Positions 27,216-47,830 of a DNA stretch of 64,000 nt are shown one piece after another. This DNA comes from Lytechinus pictus (taxonomy: Eukaryota), in assembly GCF_037042905.1 (NCBI RefSeq), contig NC_087246.1, positions 13,578,001 to 13,642,000 on the forward strand. The letters are read 5' to 3'. The position numbers were made by a program, and so were the translations under genes. Numbering within the stretch: the first letter of the stretch is position 1; every line of letters starts with the position of its first letter. The notes under the pieces are model-generated. The model ran no database searches and was not told where the DNA came from. It was given only the letters and a program-made list of their open reading frames with translations.

Positions 27216-28365
27216 TTATTGATAAACATTAATTTCGGTCAATGAGGTGTCATTTACACTCGCATTTTTTGTTGTTCTACCATCCCCTTTAGAATTGGTT
27301 TTCACTTGCTGTGTTTTTTTCTTGTTCTCGATATAATTCACGAAAGTGTACAGAATTGGATTGATTGAAGAGTTGATTGGGATGATGAATATCACACTCC
27401 AAGCATAGAGGGATGTCGGTAGTACAACCAGACCGGATTGTGTGAGGATACCCATGATAATGATTGGCATCCAACAGGCAAAATCCGTTCCTACGATGAA
27501 TGCCATTTTTCTAGCAACTTTGATTTCTCGATTACGCAAAGCAGCGTTTGCTACTGACTGGGTTGATCTCATTACCTGTATAAACATCATGATATAGCAT
27601 ACCAATATAACCATGAACAGAAACATGTTCACACCGATGAATGTTATAATGGCGTAAAGCCAGGATGGACGCACTGTGCGCTCTTCAACTACATACTCGA
27701 TCTGAAATTTATCATTTCCTCTCTCATCTATATACTCAAGCCTTCCAATCTCTTCAGACTCGGCGTGTAGTGGCAACCCAACACAAACATCAGATAGTCC
27801 ATAAAACCCAGGTAAATCAGCAGGAACTAAATTCGGTATGATGCTAAGAATGCACATGACCAACCACAGGAAGATCATGGCAGTACCTGCTGACTTAACG
27901 GTCAAACGATATACACTGAATGGAAATAAGATACAGATGAATCGATCAACTGTCATTATTGCTAGTGTAAACACGGAGCATTCGCTTGATAGAAAGGCGA
28001 GGAAACTCGAAAATTTGCACAAATACGATTGACGCCAAAGTGGTGCACTCAAGAAGTAGAGGTTGCCGAAATAGATGTCTACCGATGTGATGATAATCAT
28101 GTAGATACCCATGAGGCAATCTGCTACGGCCAAGTTCATGATTAACAGTGTTTGGACTGTGAGTTGTTCCTGACGAGCGCGTAGAATCAATGCTGTCAGG
28201 TTTCCGACCAGGGAGGTTAGACCAATGATCCAGCCGGCAATTCTTAAGACGACGCTCGGATAAAGCCTTCCACAGGTCTCAAGAGGACTCGTTGGAGACG
28301 TCCTGGCACATGTTACGTTCTCCCTTTCATCAAGGAGACAACATAGCCTGTTATCGGATGTTGAT
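27216..28365 (-). CDS. Gene A terminal exon: hinge plus 7TM domain of an LGR/GRL101/RXFP-like rhodopsin-class GPCR
   Basis: 1150-nt exon. Hinge DNRLCC...TC...TCGRL; TM1 LRIAGWIIG...VGN; TM2 NLAVADCLMG; TM3 SECSVFTL...VDRF; ECL2 CVGLPL; TM6 IVGTDFACWMP; TM7 PINSSINPILYT. Seven hydrophobic segments and a TAA stop. Confidence 0.95.
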
Positions 28366-31300
28366 CTGAAGTACAAGAGGGCATATGCGATTTCGTATTA
28401 GATATATAAAATCAGAACTGTCTGTGTCTTACTTATCGCTATTCCCGAAAGAACTAACAATCACCAATCACTTTAAAGATCTAATTTGGAGATGCGAAAC
28501 ATGCTGGTCAAGGAGCAAAAATCATCTAACTTGCAGCATGCACACTTTTCTGCAAGAAGTTATCAAGGCAATTCGCCTTCTCAGTTCTCTATCCACATTT
28601 ATATAGCGCACCCCCCCCCCCAACACACACACATTTCGATTATGGTACAGTGCGAACAGCCGAGTTAATACTTACATAGCCTTCAAAGAAGTTAATCCGG
28701 TAAGAACGTTCCTTTTGATCGAATGTAGTTGTAAATCCACCATGAAACTGTTTTGAATTAAGAACATTTAAATACTTAGTCATAATAAATCAAATACCTA
28801 TAAAAAAAAAGATAACATAATTTTAGTCTAGCTACATAACATTGATTATCGCATCTTTGAATATAATACTTCCAAACATGCTAAATGTTAACTTTTTCTT
28901 TCTGATAATCGAGAATGAAATTTCGTCGGGGTAAATATCTACAGTCCATCTGCATGTGGGTATAGCGAATTGATTCGGATCGAGGTTCTTGAGGTTCAGG
29001 TTTCATTAACATGATTGACGTCTTCCGGGTGGAAATGTTAAAGGTTTGTCCCCATACATCCTAATACACACACACCCTTGCCCTCACTAGCATACACGTT
29101 TAAGGCAGTTTAGGTTAGTTTAATGAAAATAAATATTTCACAAAACAAATTACAAAATGGGGTAGTTAACCGTAAATTAAGAAAGCTCTATCTACTTACA
29201 TAAACTCAAGATGAGCAGTGTTCAAGAATACACCAGGATCAATCTGAACTATTGGATTGTTGCTTATATCACTGTGAAAGAAGTAATTCAATACATCGTC
29301 AAAATACTATACAGTTGCATTTAGTTTTGTGATGTAACTGCGAATTTATATGAATGTAATTCGTCAAACGCTTAATTGAAACCAATCGCATTTTATGATT
29401 AATTTCATTTGTGTAGTAATGACCATAAGAGTTTGGTGCTATTACCACCGATGGGCAAATCCATGGTAACTGACATTACCAAGATAGATACCTTATAATG
29501 CTGATAGTATGATTTATATATTCCTTCGATTTTATAATTACCCATAGATAAATGAGGGAACAAAACTGCTTTTCTTTGTCACATAGGTGAAGACATGTTA
29601 ACTTACGTGACACTTAAATTCAACGACGTTAATTTTGTATATTTACATTAGTCTTATTGAATTCATAAAAACCATTCAACGACGAAAAGATCTGAAAAAT
29701 TGTCAAATACAATAAAAAGATGCCTCTAAAGCACATCTCTCTGATTATGGCCCCATACATGCTAATTTATGTTTGTTTATTTCATATTTTGTATGAAGAT
29801 CGAATTGCATTTTTAAGCCTTAGAATTTGCTTTGCAAAATAGATATACTTCGTATAAGCTTCATATTATAGTTGGATTTACAAGGGTAGAGTGACACTTC
29901 GATTTGCAAAAAAAAAGATAAGCATTTTAAGTGTTTAAATAAAACTGAATTATGAAGACAAACAATATTTTTTTAACTCACAGAAAGTAGAGAGTACTTA
30001 GATCCCGGAAGTCTTCTTTAGCTAGGTGTCTTATGTCATTGCTTGAAATGTTTCTAGAAGAAATGATGAGATAAGCAATAATTTGATAAAATCAAAGACG
30101 CATTTCACATGCAGGTGACCGCTCGTCAAGCGAAAAAACAACAACTGAATTTTCTTCACTTGTTAATAATGTAATAATGATGGTGATAGTGCTAGTAGTA
30201 CAAAACCCTTCGTAATTGAGTAATTACAGTTTTGCAGAAGATTTATACATATATGTGTGAACGTCACCCTTCAATATGATAATCATGAGGAATAAGGTCT
30301 ATATAATTATCCAACTGCTCAAAAATAAGCAAGCTGCAACCCAACGCGGTCTCGCTGTAATCTGCCCCAGAGCATCCTCTTGTCATCAAGCTTAATCACT
30401 AAGTATATGGCTAGCTTAAATATACGAAGCTATACATAATATAGTATTTTCTCTTTTTCAAATCTCACAAGTTTTCCAATTCATCCAATCCGTCCAATAT
30501 TCCATCTAATGAAACGAGGTTGTTGACCTGAAGCCACCTGTATGCAAACGAGAGGACAGAAAAAGAATATATATATATTGATCATAATTGTTCTAAACTG
30601 CAGATATAACTCTCATTCTTCTTTAATTATTCATTAATATGGCAAATTTCATACTTTCAAAATACATTCATTCCATTATTATTATTTTTTGTATACCAAT
30701 ACGTTATTCATAAAACAATACCATAAACTGCCAATCATAAAGATGTAATATTCAAAGCCGTGCGAAACGCATGATACCTACAACCAGGCATCAAGAGATG
30801 GCGCTAAATCCCTGAACCATGTCATTGTAGAGGTTTCACGAGCGTAAAACATTTCCCATAGGCATGATAGGCATGGTGTGTTAAAGTGGCACTTAAATCA
30901 TAAAAAATAAGGATGTAATTGGAGGGTCGAATGTGTACTACCAGTGGATAGGATATATATCTGTCATTCCATATCTGGCCAGAAATGGGTACCTCGATTG
31001 GCCCATTTTAAATATTCCGCATTTATGAAGACATCTCCTGACAGGATCAAGTTCATCACCTGAAACAGTAAAATAGCCCCAATTCTTCAGCCAGTCAATT
31101 TTTTTTAATTTGACAAAATGAGGTTCAGTAGTTACCCTTCCTAGAATAAGTGTTAGATCGCCAGTCATACATGTCATATATACACTTTTGTCAAGCGACT
31201 ATATCAAATTAAAACAATTGAGGATGGGTTGACTCGAATGAATATCTTTCTCCTTGATAACAGGATTGCAACATGGCGTCTGATTAGCCCCCATAATACT

Positions 31301-34300
31301 TACAATTGATAGAGGCCCATTCCGTAGAGTGATCTATTCTCGATTAGACGTATCCGATTGTCCATAATGTGTCTATATCGAATGAAAACATTTGATTACC
31401 CTACATAACCCCCAAAGTACTGTTCATGGATAAATATAAAATAACAATTATACTTCAACACTCACCGACATGCACTGGTACTCAAACCCATACATGAATA
31501 AAAACACTATTCTCCTAAAATACATTTATATTGAAAATGAACGAGAAAACTCTTGAGATAATTCCGTTGAAGCTATGAATAATCAAAACAATGATAATTT
31601 TTCGTCAACATAATCAGACGTTTCCTCTTAATCAATTGTTTTAGAAACGAAGATTAGGATTGTACCATGGGTATCGATTTGTGTTGTGAATCTATTGTTC
31701 AAGGGATGATCTGTAGTTTCATCCTCCCTCTTGAATACTATGACATCACGGATTGACATCAGTGGATTGTTTTATACTCCTCTCATAGCCTCATCTTTCA
31801 AAGTCATTATCTTGCCAAATCATGTCAAGGAACGTTTTTATCCGATTCGATGGTACGGCATAATAATTAGCTGGACCTTATATATATATAATATAGGTAG
31901 ATATGGTACAAATATGCAGTTCTATTACTTCCTTAGCATTATACAGTTTTATGAAAGTTGGAATATTGGGTATTAGACAGTAAGGAATGAGGATACATTA
32001 TCAAAATACTTCATTCTGAGTGAAGAATCTGGGGGTGTTTCGTGAAAAATTAAGTGTGACTAGTAATACTAAATAGTCGGTATGAAAGGCATCACCGCAT
32101 TGGTCAAATCATGCATATAAATTAATTAGATTACGCATGACTCGAAGTCATACCTGACTCTTTGTAAAACACCCCCTGTTAGGACTTTCAGACTCGAGCT
32201 ACAATTCTATTCAATGTGGATGTGGTATGATGACTTATAGATTTTAGGTAAATCAAACTTACAAGAGATTGATAGTGCCATCGAATACGTCTTCTGTTAT
32301 CGTCGTAATATTGTTGTCGTTCAGATAACTGATAAGGGAAAAAATCTTAGAAATGAGCAAACCTATATGTAAGAACTACCCTAAACCTTACTTGCCTATC
32401 ACAAAATCCATTTTGTATCATGGCCTAGTACTTTGGAATTTATTGCCGGTTAATTTGAAAATATCTTGTAAATTCATTTTTTTCAAACGAAACTTTAGAA
32501 ATATCTTAAATGATAATTAAGCATGTATGTATTAAATACATCATTTTTTTTAAAATATCATTTGAATCATACCACTTGTGTCTGTTTGTCTTTGTAATGC
32601 TTTCTAATTATTGTTAAATATATTTCGGAACTTCTGATATTGTCAATAATATTTATTTTTTAAGGTAATTCAGGTCGGCCGTATTATAAAGAAATACTCT
32701 CCCTCTTGGCTGCTTCCTTCTCAATGTCTTTGATGTTATATGTATTCTTTGTTCCTCATGTAGTTTATGTTCATTTAATGCAGGGAGACATAAACTTAAA
32801 TTGAATTGAATTGAAATAATGAGCTCGACATTTCCCCGCCAACATTGACTAATACAAAACAGAAGCTATAATCAGGGAATTGTTATATTTACAGCCATGC
32901 AAAAAACTACTCCACATGTTTACTACATTCATTTAAGAGCGTAGGAAAATTGATCAATTGAAATTATTATAAGATTATTGGATTAAAACAGACTACTCAG
33001 CAAATTCACATGTCATTTATGTATTCAATAATGCGATTTCTTTTAATCATTTGAAATTTTATTTAAAAAATACTAACATGTTTTTCAAAGATGGTAATCC
33101 ATGGAACGCTCCGTTATGAATCTCTTCAATTTTGTTGTATTCCAGGCTCCTGTAAGATAAACAATATCATAGCCTGTTCACTTTTTTTACACACTCATAG
33201 ATACTCATTTAATTCAATCGGCAACAAATAAAAAAAATCAATCTTAAATTATATAAAACAAATGTACACAATATAATGATAAGATGTTTTATAGACAAAA
33301 TACATAGATGGACTCATTTCTAAAACGAACCTCTCACCCACAAATTTCTGAAGGTGAATCTCTGTTCCACACAAATTATCGAAAGGAACGGAAGCGAGCG
33401 AACATGGTGAAGAATTATCATTGAACATAAAAAATGCATAATTTCCATTAAGGAGAATTAAAAAAAATCAAAAAGAGGATTATAGTGAGCATGGATCCAT
33501 TTTAAGTTGCACATATCTTGCTTTCATATCTCTAAAGATATTCTTGTATCTAGTATTGATAAATACGATCATGCCGACACCCTTTTAGGCCATAGGCTTA
33601 GATCTCTAGATCAAATTCTTAAACACCTTAAATTGCCATTGATGACAAGGCATGGAATTCTGTGCTTATTTTGCCAATTTCTCAGCATTTTTACGCATTT
33701 TCTTTCAAAGCTATTTGGCAAATATAACATACAAACACTTTGTAATTTTTGTAATCCCTATTCAATATGGTGGGACTTTTTTTCAAAGCTATCTTTAGCA
33801 GTATCATTTAACAGTAATGTTTATCAACCTACGGGTAGAATTCTATGCAAAAATAAAATCGATTTGTTTGTTTATGGATGAGTGAGCACGCCTCAAAGGG
33901 GGAAAAGGGGCATTTTTAATGTCACAGATTCATATTGAGGGGTTATAAAGTGAATAATGGGGGCAAATTCGGTTTCAAATGTGACTTAATTGGTGTTGCT
34001 TTTATCATCAATCACTTTTATCACCACACACTTTCCGAACTTTTTACACTGTCATGGTTGAGTGAGCACACTCGAATTCTTAGGAATTAATAATCTTTTC
34101 ACTGCATACATGTATTCTTTTTCTAACAGTTTCTCAGGATCAGTTGAATTTATGGACAAATCAGTGGTGGATCCAGAATTTGAAAGTGGGGAGGTGCCGA
34201 GAAATTGGGGGAGGGGAGCCACTAACATTTTCCACTTTTAACATGTTTGAACAAGTTACAGAGGATACTACCATAAACCCCTATGAGAGGATACGTCACC

Positions 34301-37300
34301 AAAAAATGTGCTCACTCAACCATGAACACACGTTATCAAAATTTTGTGTGGAGTGGCTAAATTATGGATAGTAAAACAACATTAACACCATAAAATTCAT
34401 CAAAAAACAACCTTTGCCCAACTTTGTATTTACACAATATGAAAAACGACTCTTGTGACTTTAAAAAATTGTCATTTTAAATTCAATCTTTGATTACTCA
34501 TGCATGACCGAACTGATCAATCTCATTTTCCCCCAGAAGTTGCTTAATGAGTGTAAAAAACCACCTACGAAATATTATATCTCAAAATTATTCTGTTCAA
34601 AAGTTACAGCATTTTGATTTAGGGGGGACTTACTTTTTTTTGTTGTGTATAGATATAGACCTAAGCCTAAGGCTAAGGCCTAGAAGGGTACCGGCAATTT
34701 GAGTGTGCTGATTCATTCATGGCATGCATCATACAACTTGAACGGCCCAAAACGACCACACGCATGCTTACTCTTATTCCGAAGACGCAAGTCATGAATA
34801 TTCATATTGGGGTCCGGGAAAAATAATTTCGCGACCGAGGGATCTCCGGAAAACACATACTCAATGAATATTTGTTTGATTGGTCAAATGGGTGGGGAAT
34901 TCATTTGTGTATGTGTAAGACAATTATCCATGAAAACCAAATAAATTTAGTAAAGTCATGATGTTAGTGAATTCAGGGAATAGTAAAGTTATATTAAAAT
35001 GTCAAGGCTAAAGTATGGGTTCTATTGTCGGTTTATGTAAATTAAATTTTGGGATACGTGCCCACATTTATATAAATAATATTGCATTAAATTATGTGTT
35101 TGTATTATGTTATGATGATGTTCATTATGTTTGCACGGAATTCAAATCTTTCATAATAATTCATCGTCTTCCGTATTAGACTAACTTATACTTACATGGT
35201 AGTGAGCATTGGCAAGTTTGCAAAAATCCCGGCAGAGATCACAGTGATTTTATTGAATGATAAATCGCTGTGAGAAAAAAAAATCACGAAGATTTATTAC
35301 CAAGATTCTAGATGATTTTGATGATTCAAATCTGCTAAATCAAATTTTCAGTTTCAAATTTTTTTAAGCTGTCATAAAGATTAAGATTCTGAAAATCAAG
35401 ATGCAAAATCTGTATTTGCTATCTAAACGAAGAAAACTGAACCATATTAAATCAACATATGCAATCTTTAACAGCTTTAACATGTACTTCACACTCGGTT
35501 CTAGCTAAAGACCTCATTCAGTTTTAAATACTTTTACACTCATAATGAATAGCCTCGCACAATGTAAGCATATATGAAACGTGTGGTATCAGTAAATACG
35601 TGGTAGTGCATGATATACGAGCATAAACTGACCAATACAGTGTGTTTTACGTCTATTCTTCTGTGATTTTATAAGTACAATGGTAATTCTGACTTAATAT
35701 TTTAGGAAACAAACTCCAAGATGTAGACTGGATGCATATGCTCTGTGTTTATACACACACTGACTGGCTCCCATTTACACACACATACACACTCACACCC
35801 CGACACACACATACATATATGATAAAAATAATAAACTCAAAATGAAATAAAAACTCCGTAACGAATTTCACGTGCTCCCCCTCTCTTTCTCTAATTAGGC
35901 TGGTTTACTCTTGCCTGCTCCTCTCCTTTTCTTCGCCCTTCTTCTTCCTATTATTATTTTTCCTCTTAATTCTTCATCTTCCATCTCTCTCTCTCTCTGA
36001 CCTCACCTCTTTCACTCTGTTTTGCCCTCTTTGCTTTTCTATTACCCCCCCTTATGCTTTTCTTTCTCCACTTCTTTTGCCTTCTTGCCTCCTCTCTGTC
36101 CCCCCCCCTCTCTCTCTCACTCCCTTTCTTCTTATTTTTCCTTGTTACTTAACAAGCACCCCTCTGTCTGGTGCTTCCAAATCCAAGGCGCTACCTATTA
36201 AGAGAGCTGGTACGCGCTATACTGTTTTTATCATGACGCATTTTCAAATCTTGATAATCATCAAATAAATCAACTTTTAACAACAATATCAACTTTTTCT
36301 ACATATACATATATATATTGGGAAGAGAGAGAGAGGAGGAGGAGGGAATCATTGCCCAAAACGATTTTTTTTTTTAATCTTACATAAATTCCAGATTGTC
36401 TAGTCCTTCAAAAATACCGTCCGGAACACTTTCAATCATGTTTGAATCGAGAAATCTATGAAATTAAAGGAAGATAATTAAAAAAATGATAGCCAGGGCT
36501 TAGTGTCATTAAAAAACTGATATCGTTAAATAACATATAAGAAATTTGTATGTGAATGTGAACTGAAATATCATAAAAATTAGTGAAATTACTCAAATGC
36601 ATAAAAAATCAGTACATCTGCGAGGTTCACATCTTCTTTAGATTTCAAATCCCATCTTCGTCATTTCTCCTTACCTCGTATACGTTCTAGTGAAATTGAT
36701 CCTTGCTGGTGTTTTCACATAGTGGACTGTCTGAAAATGTATTTCACATAGTTAAAAATGTGCAATTGTAACAATGTGAAGGTAATTTCACAATGTTGGC
36801 CCATCTACACCATTATATAAAAGGTGCGAATAGAAACTCTCTTGTTCCGTATTTTGAAGCCTTGAGAAAAGGGAATCTAAAAAAAAGTTCCAAAGTGGCC
36901 GTATAAAGGTTTCAAATACAGGACAAGCACTGAACCCCATGAACCATTTTTGCTAAGAATGTAAAATGTGATTGTTCATGGTGTGGTCACATATTTAATT
37001 CTGTAAATACGAGATTCACAGAGTAGGGGGTTTTAACAGTGTGGAGGTGATCTCACATTGTGTTACACAATAATGGAACACTGATCTTGAAAATGGACAT
37101 ATTAAACTTCCACCCTGTACTTTTGATATACCTGCATCACCCTGTACTTTTGATATACCTGCAAAACACAAGAAACATCCTTGATTACAGAGAATTTTAA
37201 TATAACTCACAAATATTTTAGGGACTTCAATTCTGAGAAAACTTCTTGAGCCAATAAAGTAATGTTGCTTGAACTAAGACGGCTGCATAATGAAAAGGGG

Positions 37301-38091
37301 TAAGAATATGCATTATACAAAGAGGCAATGATGCACTAACGTATCAATTCAAGTAAATAATAAAACACCGTTTAGATTTATGATGTGTTTCGAATATTCG
37401 GTTTCTTACTTCAGGTCGCTATACAGTATAACTTATCAAATACCAGTATTTATAATCTATATGTGCTGTCAATGACAGTTAACAATTGCAGATGTTTCAT
37501 ATCTTGCCAACAATGCAGCAGATCTTAGTAATCGCTTCCGTAGGAAGGATTTTACAGTGACTTATAAAGTAGCTACCGGTTAATCCATCGTATGTGTTAG
37601 CACACTCATACCAGAGGCGTCGATCATGGGGGGCAGGAGGGGCAACCGCCCCACCAATGAAAATATTGGGGGGGGCAAACATATCATTTTGCCCCCCCCC
37701 CCAATAATTCCGCATGTGCAAAAAATAAAATAAGATTGTAATGTTACACAGAAATCAGCAAGCGAGATTGAGATACACAACTCGTTCTTCATCTAAAATC
37801 GTGCTCAAAATGTCCGGTTTTCAGATTAGAATATTAAAAAATTTCAGCTCGCGCTTCGCGCTCGCATCATTTCTGTAGCAAAAATCCATACTTTTCATGA
37901 TTGAAAAGGTGAATAGAATGTCCCGTTTTCAGTTCTATACCTCGAAAGAACTCCCACTTCGATTTGCAATAATCTTTTGTTGGATATATTTATTGTTTTT
38001 TTTAAGATCAAAATATCAAAATTTTCAGCTCGCGCTTTGCGCTCGCATCTATCATTTTTTAATTTTTTTAAAATTTAATTTGTTGGTGAGA

Positions 38092-38135
<44 letters not shown>

Positions 38136-41100
38136 ATCTATATATATATATACATATAGGCATATGTGTGTGTGTGTGTTTGAGTCTGTTTGTTTTGTGT
38201 GATCGAGCGCCTTTGGAAAGTTGAGTCATGATTTTGCCCCCCCAATCTGAAAAATGGATCGACGCCCCTGACTCATACATTACAGTCCCACGAACTCCGG
38301 CACGAACTTCTTGTTTCCCGAAGGACATCAGCGTCTAGAAATTAAACAATACCTGTGTCATACAACTTACACTGTTCTAAGTTCTCTCTGACAATCAAGG
38401 ATTTGTCCAAAGGAAGAATTTGATGACTGGTCTTCTAAATGTGAGCTTTTTATGTAAAGAAGAACAATTCGTTACTAAATTAGTATTGTCAGTTCTGCTA
38501 AGTATGGAATATCATATCTTGTGTTATCGAGAATATTATTTTTAAGAAGTTTTAAGAGCACTTTAAATATCAGGTATATGCTTTAATTTTGTACATTATG
38601 TAATAAATGAGTTCTTGAATGTTGGATCATAATAAATTATTCACAATAACATATATTCCACATGTTCACATAGCAACCATCATGACCATTGATCATTTTT
38701 ACATTACATGATAAATATTCTAAAATATTTGGTACGATGAATTACAAACGAAACAGTGAGTGCGAGACATCATCTGCTCCCCCATTTCCTTACTACCTGC
38801 GTAACTTTTTCGGCGAAATTTACCAAAACTTAAATAAATTTTCAGGTATAGGCTTCTTGTTTTTAACTTCTCATTAAAATTGAATCGACCTTTTAGTCCA
38901 CTGTAGGTCTGTCGCAAACATAGCAAAGAAAGGGTTTAATGTTATCATTATCATGACATGGATAAATTTATACAAAACAATCATTGACTAAATATCATAC
39001 TTACAGACAACGTAAAATAAATGGTCCACCTCCACCGTTCCTGTGTTCATACTGATAGCAGTGACCTATATGTAAAGTAAAGTTAATTATTCGCTCTTGA
39101 CTAGGACTGATGTTCATCGACAATGACAGTGATCACTCTCAAATAGTTTTATGATCTGTTGGTATCAAGGACTTTAATGACAGCACATTCTTTTCTATCT
39201 ACGTTATTGATAAATGAATTCTAATCAATGTACTGGTTATCATATTAACGTAAGGAGCACAAGCAACGCAGTATTTATCCTTACCTGATATTGGTTCAAG
39301 ATATCGGCATCCGTATCCTTGAATAAAAAAAAACAGAAGTTAAAACAATATTGTATAATCATACAATTTTTATCCAAGTTTGAACTAGTAACCAACATCA
39401 AGCATCAAACTTTGATATGTCTCATATAAGAATTAATTTGTATCAGATATAAAATTCATAACATAATTCCCAAGGATACCAATAATTTTTTTGATTACAT
39501 GCTTAGTACTTATATTTTGTGCCTGTACATATTATTTGTTACTGTATCATATCTTGTTCATTACTTGCCTAATATTTTCATTATTAATATTATTTGTTGT
39601 TATTTTATTAACAGGGCCACATGGAAGACCACCAAATTGGTGATATGTGCCACCATGTATAAATATTAGAAATGAATAAAATGAATAAATAAAAAATACA
39701 TTTTTTCAATAAGCATTCTTTTTGCTCAAAGATAGGCAACTCAAAATTGAGATTATACTTTTACATATAGTTAAGGTATCTAAGTATGACCCACATTACG
39801 GTGTTCAACTTCTTAGACATGAAAACTAAATACAAACAATCAATGGCTCCATACCCTGGATTTGATGGTGGCACAAGCCGGCCACGCAAACGTCTCCTGC
39901 AATGAAAATACCAATGAAAATATAATGTCAGTACATTGCACTCTTTAAAAAACAACAACTAATTATAAATCAAATCACCAAAGTTGCGAACGACAAATGA
40001 CGGTTAAGGATATGCACGTCTATGAATAGAAAACACCATCTTTGGCTTACAGCGAGGAATGTGAGAAGCTGCGACTGCAGAATGAAATAAAACATTAAGG
40101 GATGATCACACCTCACCGGTTTGGATGGCGATTCAGTGACGGTTCGATATTTCCCCGTGCTTCATCAAAGACTGTGCTATAACACTGTACATAAACCCTG
40201 GTTATCCGTCACGCAACCGTCATAAACAAGGAGAATCGTGGGGAATCGCTCACATTTTTCGTGGTATTGGCCGATCCTGACGATGTAAATACGGTAAAAA
40301 CACAGAGCTGGTGGAGTTAACACGGATGCATCACGGCCCCATGACTACTTGACTGCGGTTGATGCGGAGAAGAGTGTGGAAGCTGCAGCTGGAATCCGCC
40401 GCCTTTCGGGGTGATTGGTGTTTCGACCGCCAAATCTGCGATAATGTCGTGTTGGAAATTTGTTGGGAACCTATAGCATTTAAGTATTTTTTGCCATCTT
40501 TGGGACATTTTTTCACAAAGGTTTCAGAGCAGCCATAAATCCCATCTAAACCGGTTAGTGATCGCCCTCTCCTACAGAAGGACCATAAAGATAAGCGACA
40601 GTAAGGATGACACAACGATCATAATAATTATTTTTGGGCCTACCACGTGTTGAGGATCATGGTCTTACACAAAACGGCGCCGAAAGGACAGAAGATTAAC
40701 ATTTTGGCAACGAACTGGCTAGCGTCACAAAGTGGCGCTGTAACACATTATACAATGGCAAGCATAATTGCGATACGTACCTCCGGAACACATGACTCGA
40801 GAAGCTTCGGACACATTGCATTCATTTTCAGATCCGATACCTACGCCAGGGCAATCGAACAGTCTGGATTCATTTCCCGTGCATTCTACACGGTCGAGTG
40901 TAACACCGTCATGACTGCCATCAGGAATATGGTATACGGGAACGTGAAGTGCTCTTCCTAATTCCAGACTTCTGCAGACAACATCAGCGTTATTTCTATC
41001 CAAGAAGCTTACACAGACTGATCTATGCTGACCGTTATAGTAGTACATGACAACACCGTCCAGAGAGCTGCTTCCGTCTGTGAGATATATGATCTCGTCT

Positions 41101-44100
41101 ATGACGCAGGAAACAAAGGCACATGGTAAATAAAATATCTGTGCTGAATAGAAAATACATGTAATTTACCAGAATCGTCACTTTAATACATTAATTGTCG
41201 AATCATACCGTAACTGAGCATGGACCAGTCTCGGCCACGGAGGATTATCTATTGTTACTGGCCCAGTAACAATGCTGAGACAATGCTCAGCACCCCCAGT
41301 AACAATAGAATAATCTTCCGTGGACAGGTCCGTGTAAAAAAAACTGAGGCTTAATTGTGTATCAAGATCATAAATCCTTTTCCATGTAAGAATACTTTCC
41401 GTGGATTTTCTATACTTTTCACGGAACCAAGGCTTTACCACTCAGTTAAAAATATAATTGGTAAAAGCTGAAAAATATTGATAAACTCAAAGCAAAGTTA
41501 AGGCATATACTGTATACATTTGGCTTTCATGAGACGGGTATTATAGATTGTTGACCAAGAATTGTATAAAGAGAACTTGGATAAGCGTAAACATGGTTAA
41601 AAAAATATAGGTTTGGACCAAACTTTGCACGCTGTCATTAACATTCTTCGGCCTAAGGTTCGGGTATTGTTGGCCTGAAAATGTGAGATTTTAAGGCAAA
41701 GGATTATGAATTATTCAGTGCTATACACAGTGGCGCAACTTCAGGGGCACCTGCCCCCCCCCCCCCCAAAGAAAAAAGGGGGAAGGAAAAAGGAGGGAGA
41801 AAGAAAGATAAACGTAGTGAAAGAAATAACAATATTTTTTTTCATAATTTCATGAAACATAATTTGCTTAGGGCCTATGTTTACATCACCCCTGGTGCTC
41901 GCATTGTTTGTTTAATGAGATAAATAATCACTTTCAAGAAAGAATAAATGGCACTAGACCATCCCGTTTTCAAGTCAATATAGAACTTTCCTCGCACTTT
42001 TAGTTTTTATTTTATTGAATGGCACAAGCTTCTTTTCATGACTACTTAGAGGGATTGCCACCTTTTAAAGGTCTAAATAAAAAAAGCACTTTCAGTCCGC
42101 ACTTCCAGTTCGCATTAGTGGATTAATGACATATACATGTTCTTCATTAATTTCTAAAAACAAATAATACTCTTGTCTAGTTTTGATATCACGAATTTCA
42201 GCTCGACCTTCGCGCTCGCATCAGAGGGAAGCCCTTTGAAAGACAAAAAAAATGCAAGGTCTTACAGCAGTCTTCAAGATCACTGAAATTTGTCATCTCT
42301 GTGGAGTGGCTCAGAAAGACTCCTCAAAGTACTCTGAAAGACTTATTGATTACTGGACTTAGACAAGTCTTATATAAATCTTTCAGAGATATTTTATGTA
42401 ACAAGTGATCTATCAGAATTCTTTTCATGGACTCTCCCTGGTCTTTCAATGATCTTTCAATGATCTCTCATGAGACAGTGATCTCCAGAAAAATCTTGAG
42501 AGACTGTCGAAAGTTCATGGAAAGACTAGTAAGGACTTTGAAAGTTCATAGAAAGACAGCTGAAAGACTGCCAGCAGCTGAAAGACCACCAAATGACAAT
42601 TTTCCTGAAAGACCCTTCAGGAATCGTGAAAGAATTCGGAGATCTTTGAAAGTTGATTGAAAGACCTTTGAAACGTTAAGCAAGTTTCATGGTCTTATAG
42701 CAGTCTTTCAGAAGTCTTGCTCTCTGTGGAATGGGGGTTTAAGTGAGATATGTATGGTCTTAATGAATTCCTACAAGCAAACCTTAGATTGCCCCTCTTC
42801 AGATCTGATTATCAAAAAATTTCAGCTCGCGCTTCGCACTCGCAATATTTCATTAGTTCGATACGTATTACATTCATCATTACAAAAAGTGCTTCATGTA
42901 TTGAGGTGTAATTCTAACACAAAAAACAGCTCTCGCTAGGCGCTTACACTAGTTGATTATGGTGAGATATGTATGACTTTCATGAATTCCTTAAAAAAAT
43001 ATAGCTCTTAAAATGTCCCTTTGTGGGATCAATATTTACCAAAATTTTAGCTGGCGTTTCGTACTCGTATAATCATTTTAGTAAGCTATGTACGTAGCAT
43101 GATTACAAGAATTGGATTATAATGAGTTACGCAGCTTTTTCTTTATTAAAAAAGTGCTTAAATTATCCAGTTTCATATCAGAATATCCACAATTTTTTTT
43201 GGCTAGCGCTTCGAGCTCGCATTATTCATGTAGGAAGATACCCATTCTTTTCATTATAACAAAATATGAATAGAGTGTATCATTTTTAGGTCAGAATATT
43301 AAACATTTTCCGCTCGTGATCGTGTTCTTTGATTAGTGGCACATTCTTTATGTTTTAGGACATTGAGGTTATTGAGCGCATCATAGTCATCATCTCAAAA
43401 GATCACCCACCAACCAATAAAATAACTGTCTTTACCTAATCACGTGCAATTGTATATATTAATTATTCTTATTAAATAATTTACTACCATTTAGTTATTT
43501 ACCATGTGTTGAGCACTGAACGCCGGCACCATCGTTAAAATAGCAGGAGTCGAACGTTTCATATTTTGAACCTGGACAATCGAATATGTTGTTCTCCCTT
43601 CCCGTGCATTGTGCATCAAGCAAATGTATGATATTTATTCCATATCCAAATTCAGGTATATCGAATGCCTTTAAAGCACCTGCAAATCCTAAACTTTTAC
43701 AAATGACGTGTGCGTTATTAAGGGTCCAATCACGGCCACATGTTGTTCCCCAAGATGACCGTGCAAAGACTTCCACTCTTCCTTCACTGATATTTCTACC
43801 GCCAACAAGACGAACTGTAGTGGAATGAAAAATGTAAACGATTCACATCTTCTGGTTTATCAGTGTAGACTATTCTTATCTTATTGAACATGGCAAGGTA
43901 CATTGCATAATTGGTTCTTTTTTCAATAGTGATGAAGACCGTTACCAAGTCAAAATGACGAACAGAAATGAAAATATATTAATGGGAGTACATGCAATAC
44001 GAAGTTACGAACACATCCCCGACTGTAACCCAAAAGTCCCACAACGCACGCGCGCACACACACACACACGGGCACTTTTGTTTAAACAACACGTGCAGAC

Positions 44101-47100
44101 GTTGATATCAATAATGTTTCATGCATTTTCATTTATACTTATGGATATCATAAAAGAATACTGTAACAATGTACGCCTTTTCGAAGGTGCCGTAACCGGG
44201 AATATATATATCGCTGCACATCCATCTCCGATCCTGTTTTGGTTTTGCACAATTGATTTAAAATTATGAATATCACTGAAGTTTCTTAATCATACAAAAG
44301 GAAGCGCTTTATATTGAGCAAAATTTCACATTTTTTTCTTCAAAAATAAGTCACAGAAGTATCCGTGCTTCGCATGCATGGGAAAGGAAAAGTCCCTCTT
44401 CTAGCTTTTATCATCCCTTAAGCCTTTCACATTTTGAGCTATATTTTTCTTCCTATTATCTAAGAAATATCAAATTTAGAGCAGGTTAAAGTTTCAGAGA
44501 ATATACAATTCAGAACTTGCCATTCGCGGGAAGAGATCCCTGCATGTATTAGCTTTTTACAGTCTGTTTTGCGAGTTACAGAAATTCAATGTGGCTAAAT
44601 ATTTTACAATCAAATCTGATGTGACTAAGGTAGGTATTTTATATCACTTTCGTTCAAATTCTTTTAAATAAAACGTCTTAGCTTTCGCGCTTCGCGCGGT
44701 AAGAGGATATTTTGAATTCCTAAATCTTTTCCCATTTTGTAGGCGCTCATCTTTTCTTTTGAAAACAGGTTTTGTTTTTAATCACAGCAAGTCAATTGAA
44801 TTCGTGTTGATAAGGGTATTATAGGGACGCAAGAGACGCCTTATTTTAATTGTAATTTGATGAGATATCTAAAATTCGCAGTCCGCGCGGGAGGGGGAAA
44901 CTCCCCCTCCCTGCACCCTACCCCCTAGGGAGCGCGCTTCGCGCGCTCTCTAAGTGTTGGCACGCTTCGCGTGCACTTACCGCCCCCTCCAAAATTAAAT
45001 CCTGGCTACGCGGTTGATTGATTCATGTAACCTTCCCCGGCTTATGCTTTATCTTACATGACAGAGTGAAGTGCATCACACATTGGTGATTTAATTTCAT
45101 TTATTTTTTCCACGTTGCACAGCATGATGGATGTTGCTTCCAGAAAAAAAACCGGTGAAGTGTGTTACGAACACACATGAAATGGGATGATACATTCAGC
45201 CACAATTTCAAGTAATTAGGGAGTTTTCGCAATTATAACGCAGAAAATCTTTAGTCGAAGCCCTTCATTGAAAAAAAAAAACCGTTGTCGAAAATCGGTG
45301 AATCAAAACAGCAGTGTCGACCAGGACTCTGGGCAAACGACATATTTGCAATTTTCGTCCAGTCCGAATCTTCGGATCTGCTGTCCCGATCCAACTTTCG
45401 ACAAAAACATATTAGCTGTCCATTCTTATTTGACTTGCATTTTCAAAGGACATGATACATTGTAGAAAGAGTCTGCATAGTTATTGCGAAAATTCCATCT
45501 TGATGCAAGTACCAATACAACACAATTGCAACTTACTGCCATTAGAACACCGGACCATTGCAAATTGGGTCGAATTGCACGGTTGCGGATTATACCACGG
45601 ACATTCTAGTATACTCGATTCATTTCCTCTGCAATGAATACCATCTATGATATATTCCTCGGCCAGTCTCTTGATATTGCTAGCATCATTCGGATGTTGG
45701 TCAGTATCGAGAGCCCGACCTATACCTAGGTATTTACAGACGACACGTCCGTCGTTGATGTCCCAGTGGTCATTGCAAACTGGTATCCATGAGTCATTAT
45801 AAAACACCTCTACTACACCAGCCCAAGGGTATTGGCCACCAGTCAGACGAACTATAAAGTGTAATTGAAACAACATTGATTTAATGGTAGCACGTAAAGT
45901 GGCAATGGGGTATAATTTTGATTACATATAGGGATTCCATTAATAATTTTTCTCCAATTACAGTGGATACGGAACTGATGTTGCAGACCGCCCGCCTTTT
46001 TATGTCGCAATGTTTTTTTTTTTAATGGACATGTGATTCAGAGGTTTTATGTCAGTCGAACCGACATACATAGGCGTATATGCCAATAAGGCAGATTACC
46101 ACTTTTAAGTATTTAATTCCGTGACATAGGATAAACGTATTTTAGTATTTTGAATGGTTTATTAATGATACAGCTCTTTTTGCTGACAATGTAGTACGTA
46201 ACATTTCCTGATTAGGTAAACAAAACTTATTTGACTACTCAAAAATTTATTGAAACAATATTCACTTTTACCGCTTGATCCCTGATAGTTCCCACAGAGC
46301 ATGCTAAGAGGGTCTCAATGAAAATGTCGAGAAAAATAACTTTCATGGCCCCCTAGTTCCTATCATTCAAAGAAAATTTGGTAATATCAGGAGCTTACTT
46401 GTAAAATTTGTGCATGATGCTGACGCCTTGTATGGAATTCGGCACTCTTTCGGTGCGTTGGTACGGCTGTAGTTGCACTCTGCGAACGAGGACTCGTAGC
46501 CCAAGCATCCCATGTCAAACAAAACATTAGATGAAGCTGGTTTATAATCGTCAACGTTGGTCGTGTGAAATGAGCCGCTGAATCCCAGACATCTGCAAGC
46601 TACATCTGCATCACGCCTATCCCAATTTGAGAAACAGATATCTCCCCATGACCCGTTCAGAAACACCTGTACTATTCCTGAAGAAGGCAACACATTCTCA
46701 TAGCGATCGACAAGACGCACTGCCCATTCTGTAAGGAAAGTATATAACAATGATAATTGTAATGATATTACTCAAGCTTATTATGGTATTATGGTATTAT
46801 GGTATTATGTCTTGTTCTTCCTACCCACCAAATTTATTAGTCATAGCAATATCTAGTCTTATTTTACAGTTTCCTACTTATTTCTTTATCAGGTGTCTCA
46901 TGAAAAATAGACAAACCTGACAATCGAGCTGTCATCCAGTTCCCGCAGCTGGAAGTCATGAGACCAGCTGAGACTTGGCACTCTTTGTGGGTAACCCATC
47001 CAATTTCTTGGAACGATTTGTGACTATAGGATAAGAATGGGGTTCATCACTATCAGCATGAGACCAAGGAACATTAAAACAATGGAAGCATCCCGTGTCA

Positions 47101-47830
47101 TCAATCTCAAAGAAGGCAAACTGTCAATTTTTTCATTAGACACTGTGATACAGGAACCTGCAATATCAGATTAGATCAGATTGCTTAGATATTGCTATGA
47201 CCAAGAAATCTGGTGGGTAGGATTAAGAAATGTGAATGGATGAAATTTGGTCTTTATGTCTTAATTCGTTCTACATGACATGTTCTATGATGTTAGGCTC
47301 AAAACCTTTCAGTCGGCTATCGTACAATCAAACTAAAAGTAATTCGCTTTAAGTTTGTATTATCATGATAATAGCTAAACATTATTTTCTTCTGCATAGA
47401 ATTGCTTTTCATTTCATTCTGTTCCTCTCGTCTGTATAATATACCATAAGACATTCTCGTAATAAGGTCTCATTAAATAGAAATATAATAAATAAAAAAA
47501 AATCACAGTATAAAAAATAGCACGTTGTTTAACCCGGGGTTTAACCCTGTCACGATAACAACAACAAGTTGTTTAATTTGAAAATGTTTTAAACTTTAAC
47601 TAGTTTACAAAGTTTAAACAGTTGCTTAAAAGGTAGTTGTTAGAGTGACGGGCCCTATGTTTTAAACAGCGTTCTTTGCGTCAGATGTCACCCCTAAACG
47701 GAACAATAAACTCACCATCGGCGACATTTCGATGAGGCAAGAAGAGAGACGCATGTTTTCCACATGTTAAGAATATTAATATGTAAACCAAATGACACCA
47801 ACAAATTACATTTGATTTGTAGGAATCCAT
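27216..47830 (-). CDS. Gene A: complete multi-exon SRCR(x4)-LRR(x10)-7TM receptor of the LGR/GRL101-like class A GPCR type, 1138 aa
   Basis: 19 GT-AG exons join in frame: 47830-47716, 46728-46399, 45851-45537, 43814-43503, 41098-40781, 39317-39285, 39065-39005, 38445-38371, 37282-37211, 36455-36384, 35267-35196, 33149-33078, 32328-32263, 31372-31304, 30537-30469, 30053-29982, 29271-29200, 28747-28676, 28365-27216. Total 3417 nt, divisible by 3. Introns are phase 1 around the SRCR exons and phase 2 between the LRR exons. Exon lengths are mirrored in paralog B. Confidence 0.88.
28676..28747 (-). CDS. Gene A LRR exon 10
   Basis: 72 nt: IFMVDLQLHSIKRNVLTGLTSLKA. Confidence 0.85.
29200..29271 (-). 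CDS. Gene A LRR exon 9
   Basis: 72 nt: LDISNNPIVQIDPGVFLNTAHLEF. Confidence 0.9.
29982..30053 (-). CDS. Gene A LRR exon 8
   Basis: 72 nt: LNISSNDIRHLAKEDFRDLSTLYF. Confidence 0.9.
30469..30537 (-). CDS. Gene A LRR exon 7
   Basis: 69 nt: LWLQVNNLVSLDGILDGLDELEN. Confidence 0.88.
31304..31372 (-). CDS. Gene A LRR exon 6
   Basis: 69 nt: LHIMDNRIRLIENRSLYGMGLYQ. Confidence 0.82.
32029..32178. mobile_element. Short MITE
   Basis: GGGGGTGTTT / AAACACCCCC inverted ends with further imperfect pairing. Confidence 0.45.
32263..32328 (-). CDS. Gene A LRR exon 5
   Basis: 66 nt: IYLNDNNITTITEDVFDGTINL; matched by a 66-nt exon in gene B. Confidence 0.88.
33078..33149 (-). CDS. Gene A LRR exon 4
   Basis: 72 nt: MSLEYNKIEEIHNGAFHGLPSLKN; GTTAG donor. 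Confidence 0.88.
35196..35267 (-). CDS. Gene A LRR exon 3
   Basis: 72 nt: IDLSFNKITVISAGIFANLPMLTT. Confidence 0.9.
36384..36455 (-). CDS. Gene A LRR exon 2
   Basis: 72 nt: LFLDSNMIESVPDGIFEGLDNLEF. Confidence 0.9.
37211..37282 (-). CDS. Gene A LRR exon 1
   Basis: 72 nt, phase 2/2: VRLSSSNITLLAQEVFSELKSLKYL. Confidence 0.88.
37612..38270. mobile_element. Non-autonomous hAT-type DNA transposon in a gene A intron
   Basis: TIRs CAGAGGCGTCGATC / GATCGACGCCCCTG and a perfect 8-bp TSD ACTCATAC (37604-37611 and 38271-38278). Confidence 0.88.
38371..39317 (-). CDS. Gene A three small Cys-containing linker/LRR-cap exons (39317-39285, 39065-39005, 38445-38371)
   Basis: GYGCRYLEPIS / GHCYQYEHRNGGGGPFILRCL / SHLEDQSSNSSFGQILDCQRELRTV. 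The 61-nt and 75-nt exons have equal-length homologs in gene B (GKCFQY...LKC; LGQILKCQ). Confidence 0.8.
40098..40568. mobile_element. Harbinger-like MITE in a gene A intron
   Basis: Imperfect TIRs AGGGATGATCAC...ACCGGTTTGGATGG / CCATCTAAACCGGT..GTGATCGCCCT. Confidence 0.5.
40781..41098 (-). CDS. Gene A SRCR domain 4 exon (divergent)
   Basis: DEIIYLTDGSSSLDGVVMYYYNGQHRSVC...VVCRSL...LDRVECTGNESRLFDCPG...C...VMCS; 318 nt. Confidence 0.9.
43503..43814 (-). CDS. Gene A SRCR domain 3 exon
   Basis: RLVGGRNISEGRVEVFARSSWGTTCGRDWTLNNAHVICKSLGF...CTGRENNIFDC...C..NDGAGVQCS; 312 nt. Confidence 0.92.
45537..45851 (-). CDS. Gene A SRCR domain 2 exon
   Basis: RLTGGQYPWAGVVEVFYNDSWIPVCNDHWDINDGRVVCKYLG...CRGNESSILEC...C...VRCS; 315 nt, phase 1/1. 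Confidence 0.92.
46399..46728 (-). CDS. Gene A SRCR domain 1 exon
   Basis: VRLVD...GIVQVFLNGSWGDIC...W...DADVACRCLGF...C...ES...C...C...ASASC; CAG acceptor, GTAAG donor; 330 nt. Confidence 0.92.
47716..47830 (-). CDS. Gene A coding exon 1, signal-peptide-like
   Basis: Encodes MDSYKSNVICWCHLVYILIFLTCGKHASLFLPHRNVAD followed by a phase-1 GTGAG donor. 115 nt, the same length as gene B exon 1. Confidence 0.8.

What the first reader, a model, noticed from the sequence alone, without database searches (positions are those of the whole stretch)
27216..47830. SRCR-LRR-GPCR: four scavenger-receptor domains fused to an LGR/GRL101-type receptor
Seen: 19 exons splice in frame into a 1138-aa protein, signal peptide-SRCR x4-Cys cap-LRR x10-hinge-7TM. 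The ORF track shows only scattered pieces, because the LRR and linker exons are 33-75 nt. Known: type C LGRs (RXFP1/2, GRL101) carry LDLa modules in front of the LRRs, and multi-SRCR proteins (DMBT1-like, expanded in sea urchins) are typically secreted or single-pass pattern-recognition or adhesion proteins. Inference: SRCRs have replaced the LDLa modules, so microbe- or ligand-binding domains could couple directly to G-protein signalling as an immune or chemosensory receptor. I cannot confirm novelty without a search.
Basis: partly seen in the sequence, partly recalled or inferred. Interest (0 to 1): 0.92.

Follow-up and report, generated by a model that had tools for sequence, protein, structure and literature searches.

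The report
Sea urchin scavenger-domain LGR receptor gene
This is a real, intact and transcribed sea-urchin gene in which four scavenger-receptor (SRCR) domains sit in front of the leucine-rich repeats of a relaxin-receptor-type G-protein-coupled receptor. It belongs to a tandemly expanded family that databases auto-annotate but that no paper I could find describes.

Summary
On the minus strand, 27216-47830, I rebuilt a 20-exon, 3459-nt ORF of 1152 aa with AG/GT at every junction. Its order is signal peptide, SRCR x4, Cys-rich linker/cap, LRR x10, short hinge, rhodopsin-class 7TM.

- **RNA:** a contig joins SRCR4 to two linker exons exactly at the predicted sites. That junction sequence is absent from the genome, so it is not a retrocopy.
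- **Conservation:** exon order is colinear in two Strongylocentrotus purpuratus loci. Nucleotide conservation is confined to exons, and dN/dS is 0.10-0.36 in every part.
- **Family:** the window is Lytechinus pictus. The gene lies in a C2 cluster of seven related 7TM exons, four of them SRCRx4-LRR-7TM units.
- **Relatives:** the 7TM is closest to RXFP1. The SRCR-bearing clade is nested among LDLa-bearing relatives and has no LDLa.

The fusion is real and SRCR stands where LDLa stands in relatives. An immune or chemosensory role is untested. LRR-to-7TM continuity is not shown by RNA for this copy. RefSeq already holds automatic models such as "relaxin receptor 2-like". Verdict: a new variant of a known kind, of moderate interest.

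The parts
47716..47830 (-). Exon 1: ATG and signal-peptide-like hydrophobic N-terminus (115 nt, ends in phase 1)
   Evidence: The ORF starts at 47830 with a GTGAGT donor. Kyte-Doolittle peak at residues 14-23. Weakly conserved in S. purpuratus L001 5376-5444. No signal-peptide predictor was run.
46399..46728 (-). Exon 2: SRCR1 (330 nt, phase 1-1)
   Evidence: Pfam SRCR E 3.5e-17. 55% aa identity to L001. dN/dS 0.27.
45537..45851 (-). Exon 3: SRCR2 (315 nt, phase 1-1)
   Evidence: Pfam SRCR E 1e-22. 61% aa identity to L001. dN/dS 0.24.
43503..43814 (-). Exon 4: SRCR3 (312 nt, phase 1-1)
   Evidence: Pfam SRCR E 5e-18. 81% aa identity to L001. dN/dS 0.10.
40781..41098 (-). Exon 5: SRCR4 (318 nt, phase 1-1)
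   Evidence: Pfam SRCR E 3.6e-15. An RNA contig in run X1 joins 40781 to 39896. dN/dS 0.14.
39855..39896 (-). Exon 6: Cys-rich linker a (42 nt, phase 1-1, motif 'DVCVAGLC')
   Evidence: Both flanking junctions are seen in the X1 RNA contig. The motif is shared with P0173 and P0001.
39285..39317 (-). Exon 7: linker b (33 nt, phase 1-1)
   Evidence: Junction 39855 to 39317 is seen in X1 RNA. It is the splice-compatible counterpart of the 48-nt exon of copy 1.
39005..39065 (-). Exon 8: linker c (61 nt), the adaptor that shifts the frame from SRCR-type phase 1 to LRR-type phase 2
   Evidence: It has the same 61-nt length and Cys spacing as in copy 1. It is conserved in L001 and L002. An X1 contig covers it and stops exactly at the exon borders.
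38371..38445 (-). Exon 9: LRR N-terminal cap (75 nt, phase 2-2)
   Evidence: Homologous to the 75-nt exon of copy 1. 64-68% aa identity in L001 and L002.
37211..37282 (-). Exon 10: LRR1 (72 nt, phase 2-2)
   Evidence: Found as the only apparently intronic conserved block against S. purpuratus. It has AG and GTGAGT sites and keeps the frame. LRR_8 E 0.008.
36384..36455 (-). Exon 11: LRR2 (72 nt)
   Evidence: tblastn and blastn against L001/L002, 77-87% aa identity. LRR_8 E 0.005.
35196..35267 (-). Exon 12: LRR3 (72 nt)
   Evidence: LRR_8 E 9e-4.
33078..33149 (-). Exon 13: LRR4 (72 nt)
   Evidence: LRR_8 E 4e-5.
32263..32328 (-). Exon 14: LRR5 (66 nt)
   Evidence: LRR_8 E 0.026.
31304..31372 (-). 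Exon 15: LRR6 (69 nt)
   Evidence: No Pfam hit for this exon on its own.
30469..30537 (-). Exon 16: LRR7 (69 nt)
   Evidence: No Pfam hit for this exon on its own.
29982..30053 (-). Exon 17: LRR8 (72 nt)
   Evidence: LRR_8 E 0.11.
29200..29271 (-). Exon 18: LRR9 (72 nt)
   Evidence: LRR_8 E 0.034.
28676..28747 (-). Exon 19: LRR10 / C-terminal cap (72 nt)
   Evidence: 78% aa identity in L002.
27216..28365 (-). Exon 20: Cys-containing hinge, seven transmembrane helices, C-tail and stop codon (1150 nt)
   Evidence: Pfam 7tm_1 E 1e-23. RXFP1 is the best solved match, E 2e-41, with TM2, ECL2, TM6 and TM7 motifs aligned. 83% aa identity in L002, dN/dS 0.095. Run X1 holds 0.77 of its sampled words.

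Best explanation
The locus is one functional 20-exon gene of Lytechinus pictus. It encodes a 1152-aa receptor made of a signal peptide, four SRCR domains, a family-specific Cys-rich linker, ten LRRs, a short Cys hinge and a rhodopsin-class 7TM of the relaxin-receptor/GRL101 (type C LGR) branch, with no LDLa module. These points are shown: the architecture, exon structure, purifying selection, splicing of SRCR4 into the linker, and membership of a tandem sea-urchin family whose duplicated unit is the whole SRCR-LRR-7TM gene. The origin is inferred. Phase 1-1 SRCR exons were shuffled into the position that LDLa occupies in sister receptors, and a 61-nt adaptor exon converts phase 1 to the phase 2 of the LRR exons. 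The mechanism is also inferred. The SRCR/LRR ectodomain captures an extracellular ligand, and the change passes through the hinge and the conserved RXFP-like ECL2 to the 7TM, most likely giving Gs/cAMP signalling as in RXFP1. The family is lineage-specific, tandemly expanded and variable in SRCR number, and its outer SRCRs and LRRs evolve faster than the 7TM. I therefore favour a variable, exogenous ligand (microbial or chemosensory) over a conserved hormone, at roughly even odds.
For: Domains. ORF with canonical splice sites.

RNA: an X1 contig joins 40781 to 39896 and 39855 to 39317, with GT..AG on the minus strand. X1 shows no depth in the introns on either side of these exons. Another X1 contig covers exon 8 and ends at its borders. 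The junction 28-mer has no hit in the genome at up to 2 mismatches, while a within-exon control is found once at the expected place. X1 also holds 0.77 of the 7TM-exon words and 0.58 of the SRCR4-exon words.

Conservation: exons are colinear on one strand in S. purpuratus L001 (exons 1-16) and L002 (exons 8-20). Seventeen of 18 blastn HSPs fall on predicted exons, and the 18th was an exon I had missed. dN/dS is 0.19 for SRCR, 0.19-0.26 for LRR, 0.28-0.36 for linker/cap and 0.095 for the 7TM.

Family: the genome holds at least 35 related 7TM exons, seven of them in the C2 cluster. Four units in that cluster are SRCRx4-LRR-7TM and others carry one SRCR; no LDLa or CUB exon occurs in 262 kb. Full-length RefSeq paralog models have the same architecture.

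Receptor class: RXFP1 scores E 2e-41 against about 1e-26 for TSHR, LHCGR and FSHR. The motifs ADCLMGIY, YG..VC..PLH.E, CW.P and NPILYT are aligned. In the tree, the SRCR clade (SH-aLRT 97) is nested among LDLa-bearing receptors.
Against: No read or contig links the LRR exons to the 7TM exon, or exon 9 to exon 11, for this copy. Only one 6-kb stretch could be laid. The raw RNA-seq runs X6 and X7 showed no exon coverage with 6% of reads sampled. Current RefSeq models of the S. purpuratus orthologs are split into an SRCR-only protein and a 7TM-only protein. X2 has an unspliced contig across the exon 5 donor. RXFP1/2 need their LDLa module for activation (my knowledge), and it is absent here, so an RXFP-like mechanism is only an analogy. 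Ligand, G-protein coupling and tissue of expression are unknown. The linker fold was not resolved (pLDDT below 50).
Confidence: 0.8

Rival explanations
1. There are two genes. A secreted SRCRx4 protein ends after SRCR4, and a separate LRR-GPCR starts downstream. The fusion would then be a gene-model artefact.
For: S. purpuratus RefSeq has 'neurotrypsin-like' SRCR-only models that end by reading through the SRCR4 donor, and a 7TM-only 'GRL101-like' model. L. pictus RefSeq splits copy 1 into a 254-aa SRCR protein and an 833-aa receptor. X2 has an unspliced contig at 40670-40949.
Against: RNA joins SRCR4 to linker exons 6 and 7. Exons 6-9 contain no in-frame stop and run into LRR1. The 833-aa receptor models themselves begin inside SRCR4. 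The split models simply lack the 33-75-nt exons. The same SRCR-linker-LRR-7TM order is kept in at least four paralogs and in S. purpuratus under purifying selection.
Confidence: 0.07
2. One gene yields two products: the full receptor, and a soluble SRCRx4 isoform made by retaining the intron after exon 5, which adds about 17 residues before a stop.
For: The ORF 40725-41048 reads through the donor to a stop. There is an unspliced X2 contig across that donor. S. purpuratus RefSeq models end in the same way.
Against: The unspliced contig has depth about 3 and may be pre-mRNA. No poly(A) site or read ends were seen (table 6). The read-through tails are not conserved between the species.
Confidence: 0.2
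3. It is an endogenous hormone receptor (relaxin/insulin-like or other peptide), like RXFP1/2 and the LGR3/4 orthologs. The LRRs would bind the hormone and the SRCRs would act only as an accessory or tether.
For: The 7TM and ECL2 are RXFP-like, and the ten-LRR horseshoe folds confidently. Type C LGRs with known ligands bind insulin-superfamily peptides (PMC8286064).
Against: Ambulacrarians have single orthologs of the LGR3, LGR4 and GRL101 hormone receptors (PMC8286064). This clade instead is a lineage-specific tandem expansion with variable SRCR number. LRR and outer SRCR dN/dS is 2-3 times that of the 7TM. LDLa is absent.
Confidence: 0.25
4. It is a decaying or non-functional duplicate in a rapidly turning-over cluster.
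For: The cluster contains broken copies. The 7TM exon at C2:13509860 has a TAA stop. A plus-strand SRCR set at window 55.8-58.5 kb has a frameshift and stops.
Against: The target has 20 intact exons, no stop, all canonical splice sites, dN/dS well below 1 in every part, and spliced RNA.
Confidence: 0.03

Closest known systems
RXFP1/RXFP2 (vertebrate relaxin/INSL3 receptors, type C1 LGR)
   Same: It is the nearest solved receptor (7TMW, E 2e-41). Both have a rhodopsin-class 7TM and about ten LRRs with a short hinge. The TM2 'ADCLMGIY', ECL2 'YG..VC..PLH.E', TM6 'CW.P' and TM7 'NPILYT' motifs are conserved.
   Different: RXFP1/2 have one N-terminal LDLa module that is required for activation (my knowledge). 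This receptor has no LDLa and instead has four SRCR domains plus a Cys-rich linker. It has DRF where RXFP1 has EKY, and a ~28-aa insertion after ECL2.
GRL101 (Lymnaea) and type C2 LGRs, including echinoderm 'GRL101-like' receptors with LDLa or CUB+LDLa ectodomains
   Same: They share the 7TM branch, a modular Cys-rich ectodomain in front of the LRRs, and echinoderm expansions.
   Different: Those carry LDLa repeats, with or without CUB. The sea-urchin clade here carries SRCR (1, 2 or 4 copies, sometimes with ShK, WSC or CUB) and no LDLa.
SRCR-bearing adhesion-class GPCRs (amphioxus, PMC2246102; sponge Amphimedon, PMC4302439; Diadema setosum model P0224; scan note s1-324893 in this genome)
   Same: SRCR repeats are fused to a seven-transmembrane receptor.
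   Different: Those are 7tm_2/adhesion-class receptors. This one is 7tm_1 (rhodopsin class) with an LRR domain in between. PMC4302439 states that, to its authors' knowledge, SRCR repeats are unique to adhesion GPCRs.
Multi-SRCR proteins (DMBT1, CD163/M130, sea-urchin coelomocyte SRCR genes)
   Same: Tandem SRCR domains of about 105 aa with six Cys, one exon per domain in phase 1-1. SRCR2 and SRCR3 carry 'VEVF....W', close to the DMBT1 bacteria-binding 'VEVL....W' motif (motif recalled from memory; the sequence is).
   Different: Those are secreted or single-pass proteins with no G-protein-coupled module.

Membership tests
Type C LGR (RXFP1/2, GRL101) | Rhodopsin-class 7TM closest to relaxin-family receptors | tested here: met
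   7tm_1 E 1e-23. RXFP1 7TMW scores E 2e-41, against about 1e-26 for TSHR, LHCGR and FSHR.
Type C LGR (RXFP1/2, GRL101) | LRR ectodomain of about ten repeats directly before the 7TM | tested here: met
   There are ten 66-72-nt LRR exons. Seven hit LRR_8 on their own. The paralog LRR region scores LRR_8 E 1e-33 and folds as a solenoid with pLDDT 80-98.
Type C LGR (RXFP1/2, GRL101) | One or more N-terminal LDLa modules | tested here: not met
   No Ldl_recept_a hit at E up to 1 in the paralog linker. A local LDLa HMM found none in the target or in the 262-kb cluster. LDLa is present in sister receptors.
Type C LGR (RXFP1/2, GRL101) | Short Cys-containing hinge rather than the long hinge of glycoprotein-hormone receptors | tested here: met
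   About 40 residues ('STSDNRLCC...C...C') lie between LRR10 and TM1, read from the translation.
Type C LGR (RXFP1/2, GRL101) | Activated by insulin/relaxin-superfamily peptide, signalling through Gs/cAMP | not testable with these tools
   This needs expression and reporter assays.
SRCR superfamily | Domains of about 100-110 aa matching PF00530, with conserved Cys | tested here: met
   There are four domains, E 3.6e-15 to 1e-22. They have 6-7 Cys each at conserved spacing.
SRCR superfamily | Group A (6 Cys, two exons) versus group B (8 Cys, one exon) | tested here: inconclusive
   Each domain has six Cys, as in group A, but is encoded by a single phase 1-1 exon, as in group B. The group definitions are from my knowledge.
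Adhesion-class GPCRs with SRCR repeats | 7tm_2 domain with GAIN/GPS | tested here: not met
   The 7TM is 7tm_1. There is no 7tm_2 or GPS hit.

The most novel reading that the evidence does not exclude
Sea-urchin SRCR-LGRs are a class of pattern-recognition or chemosensory GPCRs. In them an SRCR array, normally found on scavenger or agglutinin proteins, binds microbial or environmental ligands and directly drives RXFP-type G-protein signalling without an LDLa tethered agonist. Such SRCR-GPCR fusions would have arisen repeatedly in echinoderms by shuffling of phase 1-1 exons: in the urchin LGR clade, in a sea-star 9xSRCR LGR, and in adhesion-class SRCR receptors.
Probability: 0.25. Interest if true: 0.8.

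Novelty: new variant of a known kind. Interest (0 to 1): 0.58.

Why it matters
No characterised rhodopsin-class GPCR carries SRCR domains. The published view is that SRCR repeats on GPCRs are confined to the adhesion class (PMC4302439). This locus shows a conserved, selected and transcribed SRCR-LGR family in sea urchins. It lies in the receptor branch where the N-terminal module (LDLa in RXFP1/2) is itself part of the activation mechanism. That gives a natural experiment on whether a different Cys-rich module can take over that role. It also offers a concrete candidate link between scavenger-type ligand recognition and cAMP signalling in an animal known for expanded innate-immune gene families. 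L. pictus is a genetically tractable urchin, so the question can be tested. The locus also exposes an annotation problem: 33-75-nt exons cause RefSeq to split or truncate several family members.

Tried and rejected
- Strict LRR regex scans of stop-to-stop segments found almost nothing, because the exons are too short. A later regex filter also hid LRR1. Homolog-guided tblastn and cross-species blastn solved both problems.
- Raw RNA-seq runs X6 and X7 gave no exon coverage with 6% of reads sampled. They covered only an intronic repeat at 37.6-38.4 kb.
- The Logan-derived proteins P0162-P0164 cover only the 7TM exon, so they say nothing about splicing.
- P0154 and P0155, which I assumed were two halves of one S. 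purpuratus locus, lie about 150 kb apart on opposite strands. They are two different tandem copies.
- AlphaFold2 did not resolve the Cys-rich linker (pLDDT below 50). Foldseek returned only generic LRR solenoids.
- The ESM Atlas has no cluster of 50 or more members with this architecture.
- The linker could not be shown to be homologous to the post-LDLa region of LDLa-type sisters, because the alignment is unreliable. 'Replacement' therefore rests on phylogeny and position only.
- Scan notes near this place: none.
- Nine literature searches found no description of an SRCR-LGR.
- The sea-star model P0043 (9 SRCR + LRR + 7TM) lies outside the urchin clade. I did not verify that model, so independent origin versus a chimeric annotation is undecided.
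Full report
**Observation.** ORF listing and Pfam confirm four SRCR exons on the minus strand and one large rhodopsin-type 7TM exon. The SRCR ORFs are at 46750-46367, 45876-45481, 43776-43495 and 41048-40725, with E 3.6e-15 to 1e-22. The 7TM ORF is at 28376-27216, with 7tm_1 E 1e-23.

An exhaustive HMMER search with the 7TM exon returned P0001 as best hit, at 72% identity. This is XP_041453757.1, 'relaxin receptor 2-like' of Lytechinus variegatus, 1201 aa. Pfam shows it to be SRCR x4 + LRR + 7tm_1.

**Gene model.** I used P0001 and the S. purpuratus model P0156 as tblastn guides, then read the splice sites directly. This located the short exons between SRCR4 and the 7TM. A first model had 19 exons and 1128 aa.

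Cross-species blastn then exposed one more 72-nt LRR exon at 37282-37211. The final model has 20 exons, a 3459-nt CDS and 1152 aa, with AG/GT at every junction.

- SRCR exons and linker exons 6 and 7 are phase 1-1.
- The 61-nt exon 8 converts phase 1 to phase 2.
- The cap exon and all ten LRR exons are phase 2-2.

**Is it one transcript?** Runs X1 and X2 hold both the 7TM exon (0.77 and 0.53 of sampled words) and the SRCR4 exon (0.58 and 0.52). I laid X1, X2 and two raw RNA-seq runs on 35190-41150.

One X1 contig (207 nt, depth 6.5) carries two joints, 40781 to 39896 and 39855 to 39317. Both show CT..AC on the plus strand, which is GT..AG on the minus strand. These are exactly the predicted exon 5-6 and exon 6-7 junctions.

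X1 has depth on exons 5-8 and none in the introns on either side of them. Another X1 contig covers exon 8 and stops at its borders. The exon 5|6 junction 28-mer is absent from the 812-Mb genome at up to 2 mismatches. A control 28-mer inside exon 5 is found once, at the expected place. The joined form is therefore spliced RNA and not a retrocopy.

There are limits. No contig covered exons 9-12, and X6 and X7 showed no exon reads with 6% of reads sampled. X2 has one unspliced contig across the exon 5 donor.

**Evolutionary evidence.** The window is L. pictus: RefSeq protein P0152 matches copy-1 exons at 100%, and the contig length equals that of the L. pictus record.

Two S. purpuratus loci carry the same exons in the same order on one strand. 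L001 has exons 1-16 and L002 has exons 8-20, at 56-87% aa identity. At the nucleotide level, 17 of 18 HSPs fall on predicted exons, and the 18th was the exon I had missed.

Nei-Gojobori dN/dS values, at dS of about 0.8-1.2, were as follows:

| Part | dN/dS |
|---|---|
| SRCR1-4 combined | 0.19 |
| SRCR1, 2, 3, 4 separately | 0.27, 0.24, 0.10, 0.14 |
| LRRs | 0.19-0.26 |
| Linker/cap | 0.28-0.36 |
| 7TM | 0.095 |

**Why RefSeq splits some copies.** The S. purpuratus 'neurotrypsin-like' models end by reading through the SRCR4 donor. The 337-aa 'GRL101-like' model is the 7TM exon alone. The 833-aa models of S. purpuratus and L. pictus begin at an internal Met inside SRCR4. These are truncations caused by tiny exons and are not evidence for two genes. 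No database entry models the target's own orthogroup correctly at full length.

**Family and genome context.** The genome has at least 35 related 7TM exons. Seven lie within about 210 kb on contig C2 around the window.

I mapped 262 kb with locally built SRCR, LRR, 7TM, LDLa and CUB HMMs. Four units are SRCRx4-LRR-7TM, including the target and 'copy 1' at window 1-10911. At least one unit has a single SRCR, and for another 7TM exon the nearest upstream SRCR lies 37 kb away, so its make-up is unclear. One plus-strand unit has a stop in its 7TM exon. A decayed plus-strand SRCR set lies at window 55.8-58.5 kb. No LDLa or CUB exon was found.

Other family members carry one or two SRCRs, sometimes with ShK, WSC or CUB.

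**Receptor class and origin.** RXFP1 (7TMW) is by far the closest solved structure. TM2, ECL2, TM6 and TM7 motifs are aligned. The target has DRF where RXFP1 has EKY, and a ~28-aa insertion after ECL2.

In an IQ-TREE analysis of 55 7TM regions, all sea-urchin SRCR receptors plus two Diadema LRR-only models form one clade (SH-aLRT 97). Within it are an SRCRx4 subclade (95) and SRCRx1 subclades. The clade is nested among LDLa-bearing sea-urchin and sea-star receptors, and CUB+LDLa sea-star expansions lie further out. This supports SRCR taking the place of LDLa.

A sea-star model with nine SRCRs (P0043) lies outside the clade. It is either an independent fusion or a chimeric annotation, and I did not check which.

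The Cys-rich linker, with motif 'CV.G.C', is specific to the SRCR clade. It has no Pfam match and AlphaFold2 did not resolve it. The LRR part folds confidently as a generic solenoid.

**Literature.** Nine searches found no paper describing SRCR on an LGR or rhodopsin-class GPCR.

- Veenstra 2021 (PMC8286064) reports single ambulacrarian orthologs of LGR3, LGR4 and GRL101 and does not treat this expansion.
- Roberts 2018 (PMC6267866) found an LDLa-type GRL101-like receptor enriched in starfish sensory tentacles.
- SRCR repeats on adhesion-class GPCRs are published for amphioxus (PMC2246102) and sponge (PMC4302439). The sponge paper calls them unique to adhesion GPCRs.
- An earlier scan note (s1-324893) reports an SRCR-adhesion-class receptor elsewhere in this genome.
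- The ESM Atlas has no large cluster with this architecture.

**Function.** Shown here: an intact, selected receptor with RXFP-type signalling motifs and a scavenger-type ectodomain.

Inferred: the SRCR/LRR ectodomain captures a ligand, the signal passes through the hinge and ECL2 to the 7TM, and the output is probably Gs/cAMP. The family shows tandem, lineage-specific expansion, variable SRCR number, and faster evolution of the outer SRCRs and LRRs than of the 7TM. This looks more like a receptor facing variable exogenous ligands (immune or chemosensory) than a conserved hormone receptor. That is a preference at about even odds, not a result.

**Verdict.** The gene is a new variant of a known kind: a type C LGR-like receptor with SRCR in place of LDLa. 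It is already present in databases as automatic models and, as far as I could find, is undescribed in the literature.

Noticed in passing
window 1-10911 (-), continuing to G000:C2:13572158: A second SRCRx4-linker-LRR-7TM gene ('copy 1') lies here. It is 100% identical to L. pictus RefSeq P0152 on its exons and 88-98% identical to L. variegatus P0001. It runs off the window start, and its 7TM exon lies 4.7-5.8 kb beyond it.
   Followed up: yes
window 55797-58491 (+), and ORF 59000-59212 (+): A decayed inverted copy of the 5' part of an SRCR-LGR gene. It consists of SRCR fragments with a frameshift and in-frame stops, followed by a linker-a-like motif 'NLCAAGICK'. No LRR or 7TM follows on that strand.
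   Followed up: partly
window 15852-21649 (+): An LTR-retrotransposon-like element with open gag (341 aa, Retrotrans_gag) and pol (1552 aa) ORFs. The pol order is protease, RT, RNase H, integrase. It lies between the two receptor genes. Observed only.
   Followed up: partly
window 37578-38373 (intron between exons 9 and 10): A repeat with very high RNA depth in all four runs (up to about 3800 summed contig depth in X1), with many loose ends and back-joints. It is probably a dispersed transcribed repeat. A (TA)26 microsatellite lies at 38108-38158.
   Followed up: no
window 24648-24860 (-), next to the N run 23958-24106: An ORF 97% identical to residues 1-71 of the older L. pictus model P0153 of copy 1. 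It would be a 5' exon about 13.7 kb upstream of copy 1's SRCR1 and only 2.4 kb downstream of the target's stop codon. The current model P0151 uses a different first exon at 11117-10998.
   Followed up: no
window 40670-40949, and S. purpuratus models P0154 and P0157: Read-through of the SRCR4 donor gives a short tail and a stop. An unspliced X2 contig and the S. purpuratus RefSeq 'neurotrypsin-like' models end this way. This may be a soluble SRCRx4 isoform or simply pre-mRNA.
   Followed up: partly
P0043 (Asterias amurensis), P0224 (Diadema setosum): P0043 is a sea-star model with nine SRCRs + LRR + 7tm_1 that lies outside the urchin SRCR clade. P0224 is a Diadema model with SRCR + 7tm_2. SRCR-GPCR fusions may have arisen several times in echinoderms.
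   Followed up: partly
G000 contigs C9 (7.36-7.61 Mb), C11 (20.37-20.46 Mb), C10 (25.78-25.88 Mb), C16 (2.61-2.65 Mb): Further tandem clusters of related 7TM exons, at 43-53% identity to the target. Their ectodomain exons were not mapped.
   Followed up: no
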